Assembly: GCA_907165135.1 (NCBI GenBank)
Contig: OU015568.1
Span: forward strand, 9,796,001 to 9,860,000
Source of the DNA: Oikopleura dioica
Lineage: Eukaryota; Animalia; Chordata
Direction of reading: 5' to 3'
DNA length: 64,000 bases
In this document: positions 43,396 through 47,955 of the stretch, one piece after another
Layout: each line of letters starts with the position of its first letter
Numbering within the stretch: the stretch's first letter is position 1
Position numbers and translations under genes: made by a program
The notes under the pieces: model-generated
What the model was told of the DNA's origin: nothing
Database searches by the model: none
The model's input: the letters and a program-made list of their open reading frames with translations, nothing else

Positions 43396-46300
43396 TCAGT
43401 CAATGCAAGTCATGTTCACGCTTGATGTTACGTGCCCCTCGATAAACTTGGTTGAAATCAAGTGTTCTTCAAGATTTACAGGTTCTGCACTCTGAGCAGG
43501 ATCAAGTTTGTCCAGCAGGATATCAGGATGTTCCAGATCACTCAGAGGCTAGACAAAATAATAAGATAAGAATTTCAGCTAAAATTTCACCTGAGAGACC
43601 CGAACGATGAAGGAAAAGCCGCGAACTTTTGAAGTGACTGGAGTTGAGTTGTAATCTTTGTTCGTCAGAACAACTCTTGATTTACTCGAGTCGATCTTGG
43701 CAATTTCAGCAACTTCACTTGAAAATGTTGCCATCGTGATATTTCTGGGAATAATTTTAGATAATATTTGAGTGTTTAGTCTACCTCGAAAAGTTGAGCA
43801 CAACAGACCAGCCGTTGCTTGGGAGCTTCATTGGGTACTGAAATCGAACAAGAAGTGCAGAGTCGGTTGTTGAAGTTGTGTTGTCAATATCTCGTTCAAC
43901 AAATTGAACCATTCCTTTTGGCTGTGGTGATGCGTAGGGACAATCTGGTGAGCACATGAATGTTCCGAGACCTTTCATGTTCCACCGGAAGTTGTCTGGG
44001 ATTTTCTTTGAAAGTGGCGTGCATGTAGCCTTAATTTTTTTCGGCAGCTTGCCTCCTATAGAATAGTTAAAGGTAACTATCTAATCGAACTTCTTACCAG
44101 GAATAGTGGGGCGCAAAAACATTCCTTCTGAACATGCGATGAGGCAACTTGACCCTCTGAACCCAGGAAGATTTCCTCGACAGCTCTTAACAACAAGTCC
44201 TGTGTTTTCAGGAAGTTGGTCTTCGGTGCAATCCTTCTGCGCGATCGTTTTCCTTCCACAGATGTAGCCTCTTTGCTCTTGACATTTAGCAGATATCCAT
44301 TTTCCTGGTTGATATCCCTTTGCACTGGCAGTTCCAAAGTAAGCGCAGTTCAGTGCCTCTTCTGATGGCTTTGTTGGCTCTGATGAGTGCCAGTTGCTGT
44401 AGTATTTGCCGGAAATTGGTTGACCATCAGCCCATTGAAAAAGTGTCGGAATTTGTTCGGCTCTCTTGAGACCCAAATAAAAGTCGCCATTGATACCGGT
44501 TCGAGCGAGCTCCGTCATCAGAGCTTTTCGTTGAACATCACTGTCGATCTTGGCAAGTTGTTTGTCAATCCCCTCGCAGTCTGCAACGGCTTCTTGGTAA
44601 GTTCTTGGGCGAGTGAAAATTGTCCACGACATACCAAGGGTAGGATCTGTCAAGTGGAACATAGTGTCTTTGACAGCCCAGTTGAGCCTGAACCCAGCAA
44701 ACTCTGTTCGAGCATCTGACGTGAACTGGATCTTTAGGGTCTTTCTCGTGAATGTATAAATCTCAGGTTTCTTGCCACAGATAATTCTGTCTTCTGTTGG
44801 ATCAGAGGGCGGGCTGAGAGAAGAGTCTTCCGAGCTTATTTTGACACTATCATATTGACAGTTTTCTGATTCTTCCAGTTCAAAACCATTGTCGAACCAA
44901 ACTTGAACGACTTGTCCTTCTTGGAGTTCGCCAACGTCGATTGTCCATTGGCAGTCTGCATTGCTTTTGTAAACTGCCGGCTGTCCCGGTTTCATTGGGC
45001 CCATTGGAGAGGGGAAAGAACCAGTCACTCCGTTTGCAACTGTTACTCCGCAATTGTCATCTTGTTTGTTTTCAGCGACTCTCCAGGTTGCATTGAAACC
45101 AAGGCCTCCATCAGAAAGATCGGAGGTGAAGATGACCGTCATGGTGTTTCCTGAAGATTGATAAGGGAGCTCACGTGTTTGATTTCCGCAAAGACCTCCA
45201 GCAATAACGAAGTCTTCGTCTTCATCAACCCAGTTATCGTAGTCTTCATCATATCTCAACGATCTTCCATTTGATCCAGAGTCTGTGCCGCTTCCGATCC
45301 ACTTTTTATGAATGCCATCAAGAATTTGTACCCGATCGAATATGCAGTTCTCGTGCTCCTCGATGTCAAAATCGGTGAACTCCAATTCAACTTGAGATCC
45401 CTCTGGAACAGTGATTGTTAGGCTTATTAGATGAAAACTTGGCCCATTTTTCTAGCTTAGTTTAGGGGTCATATGTTACAGATTTAGAAAGCCCAAAATC
45501 TGAGCTTTCATTTGGGCACCAAATCAAGGGGTCTGGTTTATGCCCGCAAGGCAATTCATGAGACCGGAAGTTCCGAAATCGGCACTAGATCTCTTCAATC
45601 GAATTTTTCAGTACCGGTAGTCACTCGAAATGTCTCCAGAATAGGCGCGTTAGAAAGCCTAGTGTCTGAGCTTTCCAAAACGCAAATAAAATCTAGCTGC
45701 CCTGCTACATAGTGGCCGCTAGGGGCGCTAGAAACTCAAATTTGGCACCGTAAATGGGATTTCTTGCACTAGAACTTGCTTATTTGGTCGAAATTAAAGG
45801 TTTGAATTCGTTAATAAAGACGTAAACATCTCAGAAGTGACGTTTAACAGTGACAAAACCAACCGGTTGAGACCAAGATTATCCCGTTTTCTTCCTAGAA
45901 ATCCTTAAAATTCACTATTCTAGCGCCCCTAGCGGCCACTAGGTAGCAGGGCAGCTAGATTTTATTTGCGTTTTGGAAAGCTCAGACACTAGGCTTTCTA
46001 ACGCGCCTATTCTGGAGACATTTCGAGTGACTACCGGTACTGAAAAATTCGATTGAAGAGATCTAGTGCCGATTTCGGAACTTCCGGTCTCATGAATTGC
46101 CTTGCGGGCATAAACCAGACCCCTTGATTTGGTGCCCAAATGAAAGCTCAGATTTTGGGCTTTCCAAAACTGTGTCATTTAACCCCTAAACTAACTTATA
46201 AAAATGACCCGAATTTTCATCTAATAAGCCTAGTGATTGTCCACGTGCACTGAAGATGATCATGGTAAAAAGAAGTCTCGTTGTTCGTGAACTCATTCCC

Positions 46301-47955
46301 GATCGTAATCGTTCCATCATAGCCAATAACGTCTCCGCCACAAGCTATGTTAGTAGTTTGCTCAGTGTAATCAGTGTCGTCAGTCCAGTTGCCATTGATC
46401 ATATCGTCGATCCAATCTCGCACAGAAGCAATTTTTGCATAGAGTCCTGGTTTGTCCTCGTCCCCACAGCCTGTGCCAGAGATAACTCCGACCAATTTTG
46501 GCGACTCGCCCTCAACGCAAATCAGTGAACCCCCGCTGTCACCCTTGCAAGTATCGATTGTTCCGTCGCCGTTTCCAGCGCAGAATAAGGAATCGTGTAT
46601 CGTTCTGTTGTATCTCGTAGTACTGTTGCAATAGGCATCCTCGAAGATATCGACATGCGCTTCTTGAAGTCTACCTTCGAAAGAAGAAGAATCAGTCGCA
46701 TCAGTAAGACCCCAGCCAGCGACGTAGCAGTCTGCAGTAGTAGTGTTCGTGTCTAATGCTTCATCCTTTTTGAGGTTATAATACAGTTCAGGTCGTATAA
46801 AATTCTGAGAAAATAAAACTCATAAAAGCTTTTACTAGGGAACACCTCATTCCTGAGCTGGAAGACAAATCGGCGCTGTAATATTTCTGTCACTAAGATC
46901 CAATGAGTCTGTTTTGTAGCGAAGTAAGCAGAAGTCATTCTCAAATTCTCCTTCCTCTGTTCGCATGAAGTCCTTATGCTTCAAAATTTGGTCTGGATAG
47001 TAGGTTTTTTCATCTCCAGTATCCAGATACTGGTCGTAGTCGTTCGTGACGGTTTCATAAGCGTGAGGATTTGGGCCTTGGCAGCACTGGGCTGCAGTAA
47101 GTACCCAGTTTTCCGAAAGAATTGAACCAGAGCAGCCAAGTCTAAATAATAGTTGTTCACAAAACAAAGTCGCTGTTAATCTTACTTTGGGAATCGAACA
47201 AGCCATGTCCATCGATCTTCGACAGCATTTTTACCTCCGATGACACGTTCTTCTTGTTCCTCTTCCTCTTCGTATTTGCCCTTTTTCTTTTTCTTTTTGG
47301 CAACACGTGTTGAACGAACCATCGTTTTGTAGAATTTTTTCTTCTCTTTTTTGCTAAGAAGCAGATCTTCATCTGGCTCCTCTGGTTCTTCCTCCCATTC
47401 CGAGTAAAGAGAAAGTGATTGAGGAAGATAGACATCTTGAAGCATGAATGTTTCTCGGTCTGGCAATTCTAAGACAGTTCCTAAAAATCATATTAAATAA
47501 ATATAATATTTTATGTCACTAGTCGCAACTTTCTACCGCCAAAAAATTTTTATGGTTCAACCCTAAATTTTAGGTCCTAAACTCCAAGATTTTTGATAGA
47601 GCTTTTTTAACTCACGTATTATACATTCAAAAGCAGAAAAAATACATTTTTAAAGAAGTCTTTTAACCTCTATAGAGAGTTTTACTGAAAAAGATTTGAA
47701 CCTGAACCTTCGAAGGTTGTGTCGATTCTCCCGAGTCGGGAAGCAGATCTTGAAGACAATCCCGTATCGTCGGGGGCCCATTTTGTTCCCATATCTGCAC
47801 ATGTCTGCAAGGGGTCATCAGCCTCGGAACCGCTTCTTCCAGCAATACCACCTGATGCAGTCGCGTGAGCTTTAAAAAAAGTTAAAAAACAGGCATCAGA
47901 ATGTCTCTAACTTACCTACTCCACAAAAGACTGAGGAATAACTCGCTATCCTCAT
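43396..47955 (-). CDS. Secreted mosaic protein: trypsin-like domain (His57->Gln), 2 CUB, C-type lectin, CCP-like and a C-terminal beta domain; CUB1 exon interrupted by a MITE
   Basis: ER|VIGG, VLTAAQCC, ENDFCLL, DTCKGDSGGSLIC, VGVISG.GCG; CUB CTWTI..PEG..VELEFTDFDIE..CIFDRV; second CUB; CTL with FYLGL..FQWADG..W...C...YIC; ends VNMTCID*. Confidence 0.85.
45419..46232. mobile_element. hAT-type foldback MITE (814 bp) inserted in a coding exon
   Basis: Inverted arms of about 315 bp (45419-45733 / 45918-46232) starting TAGGCTTATTAGATGAAAA; 8-bp TSD GTGATTGT (45411-45418 / 46233-46240). Confidence 0.95.

What the first reader, a model, noticed from the sequence alone, without database searches (positions are those of the whole stretch)
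45411..46240. hAT MITE in a coding exon whose TIRs supply in-frame GC-AG splice sites (introner-like)
Seen: the element splits a CUB exon (pre-insertion TGG ACA ATC ACT GTT CCA = WTITVP). On the gene strand the entry end reads ACAATCAC-TAG|GCTTATT (GC donor at 46229). The exit end reads CATCTAATAAG|CCTA-ACAATCAC (AG acceptor at 45423). Splicing removes 807 nt and leaves exactly 15 nt (TSD 8 + 3 + 4), giving WTITSLTITVPEG in frame with the downstream ORF (45421-45385 = 36 nt). Both sites come from the TIR, so the trick works in either orientation. Established: O. dioica tolerates GC/GA-AG introns, and transposon-derived intron gain is known. Inference: this MITE family may be a self-neutralising intron generator, caught in the act.
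Basis: partly seen in the sequence, partly recalled or inferred. Interest (0 to 1): 0.9.

Follow-up and report, generated by a model that had tools for sequence, protein, structure and literature searches.

The report
Young transposon splitting a CUB exon
A small jumping element landed very recently in the most conserved part of an otherwise intact Oikopleura protease gene; its ends could on paper let it be spliced out in frame, but no RNA data could be obtained, so it may be a new intron or simply a broken allele.

Summary
An 814-bp foldback transposon (45419-46232) has an 8-bp target duplication (ACAATCAC) and exact 19-nt terminal repeats. It splits the first CUB exon of a minus-strand trypsin-CUB-CUB-lectin gene. 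A related Oikopleura lineage shows the exact empty site, and every ortholog found reads CTWTITVP.

The one read-laying run returned 0, 2 and 2 RNA reads, and every other route to transcripts was blank. The sequence evidence does not single out the GC-AG pair.
- It is one of 21 in-frame, stop-free GN-AG pairs near the element's ends. One is a canonical GT-AG pair that removes exactly 822 nt and changes only W to L.
- 14-16% of random termini give such a pair.
- Both proposed sites are base-paired to each other at the foot of a roughly 315-bp RNA hairpin.
- The insertion sits inside nine invariant residues.

The element is very young and probably still polymorphic. Without splicing, translation stops four codons into it.

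This scan holds 54 similar "hAT MITE in exon" notes on other DNA of this genome; none of those shown has RNA support. My lean is a segregating null or weak allele (about 0.5), and splicing of some kind about 0.35.

The parts
45419..46232 (.). 814-bp non-autonomous foldback DNA transposon (hAT-like MITE)
   Evidence: Absent from the orthologous site in L001 and L002. No Pfam or Rfam match.
45411..45418 (-). Target-site duplication, downstream copy (ACAATCAC on the gene strand)
   Evidence: repeat D6. L001 has a single copy.
46233..46240 (-). Target-site duplication, upstream copy (ACAATCAC on the gene strand)
45419..45437 (+). Terminal inverted repeat TAGGCTTATTAGATGAAAA, exact
46214..46232 (-). 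Terminal inverted repeat TAGGCTTATTAGATGAAAA, exact
45419..45733 (.). Left arm of the palindrome. 14 of 315 positions mismatch the right arm; 13 of these lie 20-68 nt from the end, and the inner 247 nt carry one mismatch.
45918..46232 (.). Right arm of the palindrome
45734..45917 (.). 184-nt unpaired centre of the element
46228..46229 (-).
   Evidence: Use not shown.
45423..45424 (-).
   Evidence: Use not shown.
46243..46244 (-). Alternative canonical GT donor in the flanking exon (GCAC|GTGGAC). With the acceptor at 45423 it removes 822 nt, which equals element plus one TSD copy, and changes only W to L.
   Evidence: Use not shown.
45403..45404 (-). Alternative AG acceptor with the best pyrimidine context (CACTGTTCCAG|AG), in the downstream exon. 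It is in frame with GG at 46230 (VPE becomes K).
   Evidence: Use not shown.
46217..46219 (-). In-frame TGA reached four codons into the element if it is not spliced (WTITRLIR*)
45961..45966 (-). AATAAA on the gene strand inside the element; a possible premature poly(A) signal
46241..46765 (-). Upstream part of the split exon: end of the trypsin domain and start of CUB1
44098..45410 (-). Downstream part of the split exon: rest of CUB1, CUB2, C-type lectin, Cys-rich module
43399..47858 (-). Host gene, ortholog of O. dioica CBY10439.1. It is colinear with residues 24-1074 of that protein and has no other lesion.

Best explanation
An 814-bp non-autonomous, foldback-type DNA transposon inserted very recently into the first CUB exon of an otherwise intact trypsin-CUB-CUB-C-lectin gene. 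It has an 8-bp TSD, TAGGC... termini and hAT-like features, and it belongs to a multi-copy family that includes deletion derivatives. The insertion is shown.

The rest is my reading, inferred and not shown. This allele is a young, probably still segregating, loss-of-function or weak allele. Unspliced transcripts stop four codons into the element (WTITRLIR*) and would encode the protease domain without the CUB and lectin modules. They may also end at the internal AATAAA, or be affected by the roughly 315-bp RNA hairpin. On this reading the in-frame GC...AG pair is an incidental consequence of a terminus that begins TAGGCTT. Some rescue by splicing at one of several possible site pairs is possible but undemonstrated.
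For: Insertion:
- TSD, terminal repeats and arms are as described.
- The exact empty site is present in L001, and all orthologs are uninterrupted.

Youth:
- The inner 247-nt arms differ at one position.
- Synonymous divergence from the L001 lineage is 0.56.

Probable polymorphism (inference):
- In DNA run X29, the flank contig ends 12 unaligned letters past 45418, and the next contig starts at 46254.
- This fits an empty allele with one variant at 46253.

Multi-copy family:
- Word depth over the element's ends is about 7300, against about 130 on the flanks.
- At least 4 foreign flanks and a 520-nt deletion derivative were seen in X29.

Disruption:
- Unspliced, the frame stops at codon 425 of about 1050.
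- The site lies inside nine invariant residues, QCTWTITVP, conserved down to orthologs only 47-50% identical.
- In a moderate-confidence model it sits at the end of a beta strand.

Splice pair not special:
- 21 in-frame alternatives exist, and 14-16% of random termini give a pair.
- Both proposed sites lie in the first helix of the hairpin.
Against: - No RNA data either way, so a null allele is a default and not a demonstration.
- The gene shows no other damage. Purifying selection is strong (dN/dS 0.07) and there is no excess of replacement changes on this lineage. The element's youth makes this uninformative.
- The same gene holds an inferred 87-nt GA-AG intron with a poor donor and an AAG acceptor, so weak non-canonical sites do seem to work in this lineage.
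- The scan holds 54 notes of hAT MITEs in exons of this genome. If real and common, this hints at tolerance.
- MITE-derived introns are documented in the related larvacean Fritillaria borealis (review PMC11282704).
Confidence: 0.5

Rival explanations
1. The element is removed as a GC-AG intron whose two sites lie in its own terminal repeats (46229 and 45423). This leaves a 15-nt scar and a protein with five extra residues (WTIT-SLTIT-VPEG). The family would then act as a self-neutralising intron generator.
For: - The arithmetic is exact, and the joined frame stays open for 1055 codons to the orthologous C-terminus.
- The termini are symmetric, so the scar does not depend on orientation.
- The exonic TAG before the donor matches the -2A and -1G seen in local donors.
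- A GA-AG intron with an AAG acceptor is inferred in the same gene.
- Non-GT introns make up 11-12% of O. dioica introns (PMC8008620, PMC7072748).
- Transposon-derived introns are known in F. borealis and in algae (PMC11282704).
Against: - No spliced read could be obtained.
- The pair is one of 21 and is expected by chance in 14-16% of termini.
- The donor GCTTAT matches the usual donor only at +1 and +6.
- The acceptor is AAG with a branch-like CTAAT only 3 nt upstream.
- Both sites are paired to each other at the foot of a roughly 315-bp hairpin.
- An 807-nt intron is far longer than this gene's 40-233-nt introns.
- The scar falls inside nine invariant residues.
- One reading phase in three would put the scar's TAG in frame.
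- No other family copy could be examined.
Confidence: 0.15
2. The element is spliced out, but through other sites. Candidates are:
- the canonical GT at 46244 joined to the AG at 45423, which removes 822 nt and gives the same protein length with W changed to L;
- GG at 46230 or GA at 46221 joined to the strong TTCCAG acceptor at 45403;
- a mixture of such isoforms.
For: - One search lists these pairs as in frame and stop-free. One search shows each gives a 1048-1051-codon open frame to the normal C-terminus.
- The GT donor lies outside the hairpin.
- GTGGAC is no worse than local donors such as GTTCAA, GTAGAC and GTGAAA.
- CACTGTTCCAG is the best-looking acceptor nearby.
- From my own memory, not checked here: maize Ds insertions in exons are removed through several donors in or near the element's end.
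Against: - No RNA evidence.
- The GT-AG product replaces the invariant Trp of the CxWxI motif. The TTCCAG products delete the invariant V-P.
- The shared AAG acceptor lies in the hairpin foot.
Confidence: 0.2
3. Assembly artefact: the element was placed here wrongly, or the locus is a collapsed or chimeric assembly.
For: - Palindromic repeats are hard to assemble.
- The best DNA holder has only 0.81 of the sampled words of the region.
Against: A perfect 8-bp duplication of exactly the sequence that is single-copy at the orthologous site, with exact terminal repeats flush against it, is the signature of real transposition and not of misassembly.
Confidence: 0.02

Closest known systems
Introner elements of Micromonas pusilla and Aureococcus (Huff, Zilberman and Roy 2016, as summarised in PMC11282704; survey in PMC9860276)
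   Same: A short non-autonomous DNA transposon with terminal repeats and a TSD sits in coding sequence. One or both splice sites could come from the element or its TSD, including GC donors.
   Different: Introners are defined by hundreds to thousands of copies that are observed to be spliced. Here there is one copy in one gene with no RNA evidence. This element is long (814 nt), forms a 315-bp hairpin, and would leave a 15-nt scar and not restore the coding sequence. The survey paper's text does not mention tunicates.
MITE-derived non-canonical introns of the larvacean Fritillaria borealis (Henriet et al. 2019, read only through the review PMC11282704 and through PMC13326754)
   Same: Same animal class. 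In both, introns with terminal repeats and TSDs at species-specific positions are interpreted as transposon insertions neutralised by the spliceosome.
   Different: In F. borealis the ends are mostly AG-AC or AG-AT, splicing is shown by transcriptomes, and the spliceosome itself has changed (U2AF paralogs, snRNA m6A). Here the proposed ends are GC-AG and nothing is shown at the RNA level.
Ac/Ds (hAT) and dSpm insertions in maize exons that are removed from pre-mRNA through sites in or near the element ends (my own knowledge; Zea is listed under 'transposon insertion' in PMC3443670, Table 1)
   Same: A hAT-type non-autonomous element in a coding exon, with imprecise removal that leaves or changes a few codons and several alternative site pairs. 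This is the closest mechanistic analogue of what is proposed here.
   Different: In maize the spliced products were sequenced and the alleles have leaky phenotypes. Here there are no transcripts and no phenotype.
Transposon-insertion intron gains reported for Oikopleura dioica (Denoeud et al. 2010, cited for this in PMC3443670, Table 1)
   Same: Same species complex. Transposon insertion is already listed there as an indirect source of new Oikopleura introns.
   Different: The original paper could not be read, so I cannot say whether this family or this geometry was described.

Membership tests
hAT-superfamily non-autonomous element | 8-bp target-site duplication | tested here: met
   ACAATCAC flanks both ends and is single-copy at the empty site in L001.
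hAT-superfamily non-autonomous element | Short terminal inverted repeats beginning with a YARNG-like motif; weak target consensus nTnnnnAn | tested here: inconclusive
   The termini are TAGGC..., which matches YARN but has C where G is expected. The TSD fits only half of the palindromic target consensus. Both motifs are recalled from memory.
hAT-superfamily non-autonomous element | An autonomous partner with the same termini that encodes a hAT transposase | not tested
   No second copy in the window. No genome-wide search tool for this genome was available.
MITE | Small size, no coding capacity, terminal repeats plus TSD | tested here: met
   814 nt, at the upper size limit. The only ORFs are 66 and 79 aa, mirror images on the two arms, without Pfam matches. 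No Rfam match.
MITE | Multi-copy family with homogeneous ends | tested here: met
   In DNA run X29 the summed word depth is about 7300 over the terminal 137 nt against about 130 on the flanks. At least 4 contigs with foreign flanks abut 45419, and a 520-nt internal-deletion derivative is present. Depth is not a copy number.
Introner / introner-like element | The element is removed from transcripts by the spliceosome at defined sites | tested here: inconclusive
   RNA runs X7-X9 laid 0, 2 and 2 reads on the gene, which is no test. The junction scan of metagenome contigs was blank. No transcript-derived protein fragment was found.
Introner / introner-like element | Many copies of one family occupy intron positions in unrelated genes | not testable with these tools
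   Only one copy lies in the 64-kb window. The scan with the terminal repeat returned only 20-22-nt chance matches. Exact look-ups of the element's ORFs found nothing.
Introner / introner-like element | Splice sites supplied by the element and/or its TSD | tested here: inconclusive
   A GC...AG pair in the terminal repeats is in frame. The same holds for 14-16% of random termini, and there are 20 other pairs here.

The most novel reading that the evidence does not exclude
This foldback hAT-like family is a working introner in a chordate. Its symmetric termini encode a GC donor and an AG acceptor, so any exonic insertion in either orientation is spliced to a fixed 15-nt in-frame scar, TSD plus TAG plus CCTA. 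The insertion seen here would be a polymorphic intron birth that can be followed in a laboratory animal with a 4-day generation time.
Probability: 0.13. Interest if true: 0.8.

Novelty: new member of a known kind. Interest (0 to 1): 0.35.

Why it matters
How new spliceosomal introns arise is still argued. The clearest cases, introners, come from protists and algae. A young, probably polymorphic transposon insertion in a conserved exon of a culturable chordate would be a natural experiment. Carriers and non-carriers can be compared directly for splicing, protein and fitness.

If the element is spliced, it would show intron birth in progress. It would also connect the many non-GT introns of Oikopleura with the MITE-derived introns of Fritillaria. 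If it is not spliced, it is an ordinary null allele. The many similar notes on this genome would then mostly reflect an active transposon family hitting a gene-dense genome.

Tried and rejected
1. RNA test. Three oligo-dT RNA-seq runs of the same species label were laid on 43500-47600 at 90% likeness. They gave 0, 2 and 2 reads, all in a low-complexity stretch at 47199-47472.
2. No RNA run of the species label holds the gene's 31-mers.
3. A scan of metagenome contigs for either an empty or a spliced junction (TGGACAATCAC, 0-30 nt, TGTTCCAGAGGGATC) gave 0 hits.
4. A scan of the same collection with the 19-nt terminal repeat gave 27 loci, all single 20-22-nt chance matches with no family copy.
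5. Exact look-ups of the two ORFs inside the element found nothing on record.
6. Three protein searches (434-aa ORF, P0001, and a 107-aa piece across the junction) found only uninterrupted orthologs and no transcript-derived or MITE-bearing fragment. Any annotated gene model of this genome was out of the length range or not held.
7. Relaxed constraint was considered as a test of pseudogenisation. It was rejected as uninformative because the element is far younger than the lineage split.
8. Misassembly was rejected because of the exact TSD.
9. A known RNA family or a protein-coding element was rejected.
10. Denoeud 2010 and Henriet 2019 are not held in the library. They are cited only through papers that describe them.

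Full report
WHAT IS THERE. On the minus strand the window carries a gene whose exons encode a trypsin domain, two CUB domains and a C-type lectin domain. The gene is colinear with residues 24-1074 of O. dioica CBY10439.1 from the Bergen assembly, at 76% amino-acid identity in the long exon. The window therefore comes from an Oikopleura dioica lineage distinct from Bergen. Earlier scan notes call it the Okinawa reference; I did not check that.

At 45419-46232 the long exon is interrupted by 814 nt. The interruption is flanked by a perfect 8-bp direct repeat, ACAATCAC on the gene strand, at 46240-46233 and 45418-45411. It ends in exact 19-nt inverted repeats, TAGGCTTATTAGATGAAAA. The whole element is a foldback: 315-nt arms that are 96% complementary, around a 184-nt centre. 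It has no meaningful coding capacity and matches no Pfam or Rfam family.

THE INSERTION IS REAL. Logan contig L001 is a genomic contig, 83-90% identical in nucleotides, with the introns present. It aligns to both flanks and joins them through a single ACAATCAC, reading CACGTGGACAATCACTGTTCCAGAGGG. The Bergen-type contig L002 is uninterrupted at this site. So are CBY10439.1, several Logan and ENA relatives, and two orthologs only 47-49% identical.

THE ELEMENT BELONGS TO A FAMILY AND IS YOUNG. In DNA run X29 the summed contig depth over the terminal 137 nt is about 7300, against about 130 on the flanks. At least four contigs with unrelated flanks abut position 45419. One contig is a 520-nt internal-deletion derivative.

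Thirteen of the 14 mismatches between the arms lie 20-68 nt from the ends, where the two ends of a family commonly differ. The inner 247 nt of the arms differ at one position only. Synonymous divergence from the L001 lineage is 0.56. The insertion is therefore a tiny fraction of the age of that split.

X29 also hints at an empty allele within the window's own lineage. A flank contig with 2 differences in 230 nt stops at 45418 with 12 further letters that do not match the element. The next contig starts at 46254. This is what an empty site with one heterozygous variant at 46253 would produce. It is an inference, because the 12 letters were not shown.

An intron from G46229 C46228 to A45424 G45423 is 807 nt and leaves TSD(8) + TAG + CCTA = 15 nt. 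I placed six small introns by homology with the Bergen protein, at 47701-47469, 47185-47142, 46852-46766, 44097-44056, 43784-43745 and 43590-43549. With these removed, the joined frame is open for 1055 codons and ends at the orthologous C-terminus. Its junction reads LQCTWTITSLTITVPEG. Without removal the frame stops at codon 425, reading WTITRLIR*. Because the first 19 nt of the two ends are exact inverted repeats, the same scar would arise in either orientation.

THE SPLICING ITSELF COULD NOT BE TESTED. The single read-laying run used three 2026 oligo-dT RNA-seq runs of the species label and returned 0, 2 and 2 reads, which the tool itself flags as no test. The runs either do not express the gene or come from another cryptic lineage.
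- No RNA run of the species holds the gene's 31-mers.
- A junction pattern covering the empty site and any scar up to 30 nt found nothing in metagenome contigs.
- No transcript-derived protein fragment exists in the protein collection.

INDIRECT EVIDENCE ON THE GC-AG MODEL.
(a) The pair is not special. Within about 60 nt of the two ends there are 21 GN-AG pairs that are in frame and stop-free.
- GT46244 with AG45423 is a canonical pair. It removes exactly 822 nt, the element plus one TSD copy, and changes only W to L.
- GG46230 with AG45403 uses the best acceptor context, CACTGTTCCAG, and changes VPE to K.
- Each of these gives a full-length frame.
- Among random or shuffled 12-nt termini, 14-16% yield an in-frame, stop-free GY-AG pair wholly inside the termini, and 24-25% yield a GN-AG pair.

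(b) The site context is mixed.
- The donor has a good exonic TAG but an intronic GCTTAT.
- The acceptor is AAG, preceded by a short TTTTCATCT run.
- Local donors are themselves loose: GTTCAA, GTAAGA twice, GTAGAC and GTGAAA.
- The gene contains an inferred 87-nt GA-AG intron, CAG|GAATGAGG...AAAAAG|GAT. It is conserved in L001 and absent from the Bergen lineage. Weak non-canonical sites are therefore not excluded in this organism, in line with the 11-12% non-GT introns reported (PMC8008620) and the abundance of GA-AG introns (PMC7072748).

(c) RNA structure. The predicted pre-mRNA fold of 45380-46270 is -622 kcal/mol. The helix starts at the first base of the element, so the proposed donor and acceptor are paired with each other. 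The GT at 46244 and the AG at 45403 lie outside the helix.

(d) Protein. The site lies inside QCTWTITVP. These nine consecutive residues are invariant in all orthologs aligned, down to 49-50% identity, and form the longest invariant run in the domain. A moderate-confidence model (pLDDT 75-81 over this part) places the site at the end of a beta strand just before the VPEGS turn. A five-residue insertion there is not obviously harmless.

(e) Constraint. dN/dS against L001 is 0.07, and dN to the Bergen outgroup is the same for the window and for L001, 0.174 each. The gene has therefore not decayed. Given the element's youth, this does not discriminate between a spliced allele and a null allele.

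READING. The insertion, its youth and its family nature are shown. Its consequence is inferred.

COMPARISON WITH WHAT IS KNOWN. The idea is not new.
- Transposon insertion is a listed route of intron gain, with Oikopleura and Zea among the cited cases (PMC3443670, Table 1).
- Introners that supply one splice site and borrow the other from the TSD are described in algae and many other aquatic eukaryotes (PMC11282704, PMC9860276).
- MITE-derived non-canonical introns dominate the genome of the larvacean Fritillaria borealis (PMC11282704, PMC13326754).
- From my own memory, the closest mechanistic analogue is the splicing of Ds, also a hAT element, out of maize exons.

This scan already holds 54 notes of hAT MITEs in exons of the same genome, on other DNA. 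The follow-up reports shown to me all say that no RNA evidence could be obtained. These notes are unchecked and add no independent support. They do suggest that the question is best settled genome-wide with RNA from the same strain.

VERDICT. If the element is spliced, it is a new member of a known kind. Otherwise it is an ordinary young insertion allele.

Noticed in passing
window 46766-46852 (minus strand): An inferred 87-nt GA-AG intron in the trypsin domain (CAG|GAATGAGG...AAAAAG|GAT). It is the only in-frame solution shared with L001, and the Bergen-lineage ORF in L002 is continuous there. Both boundaries carry a similar AGGA(A)TGA motif, which could be a duplication left by the event that created the intron.
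   Followed up: partly
window 45617-46138, seen in DNA run X29: One X29 contig joins 45617 to 46138 with 10 other letters between them. This is a shorter internal-deletion derivative of the same transposon family.
   Followed up: no
window 46241-46330 compared with L001 1190-1285: The roughly 30 codons just upstream of the insertion site are much more diverged from the L001 lineage than the rest of the gene: dN 0.109 upstream against 0.021 downstream. They also vary among other orthologs, so this is probably a variable loop region and not decay.
   Followed up: partly
loci of P0003 and P0004 (ENA metagenome contigs): Two relatives 47-49% identical encode 839-841 residues of this multi-domain protein as single uninterrupted ORFs. 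The window's gene has at least six small introns over the same span.
   Followed up: no
window 45961-45966 (minus strand): An AATAAA lies on the gene strand inside the element. It could end transcripts prematurely if the element is transcribed as part of the gene.
   Followed up: no
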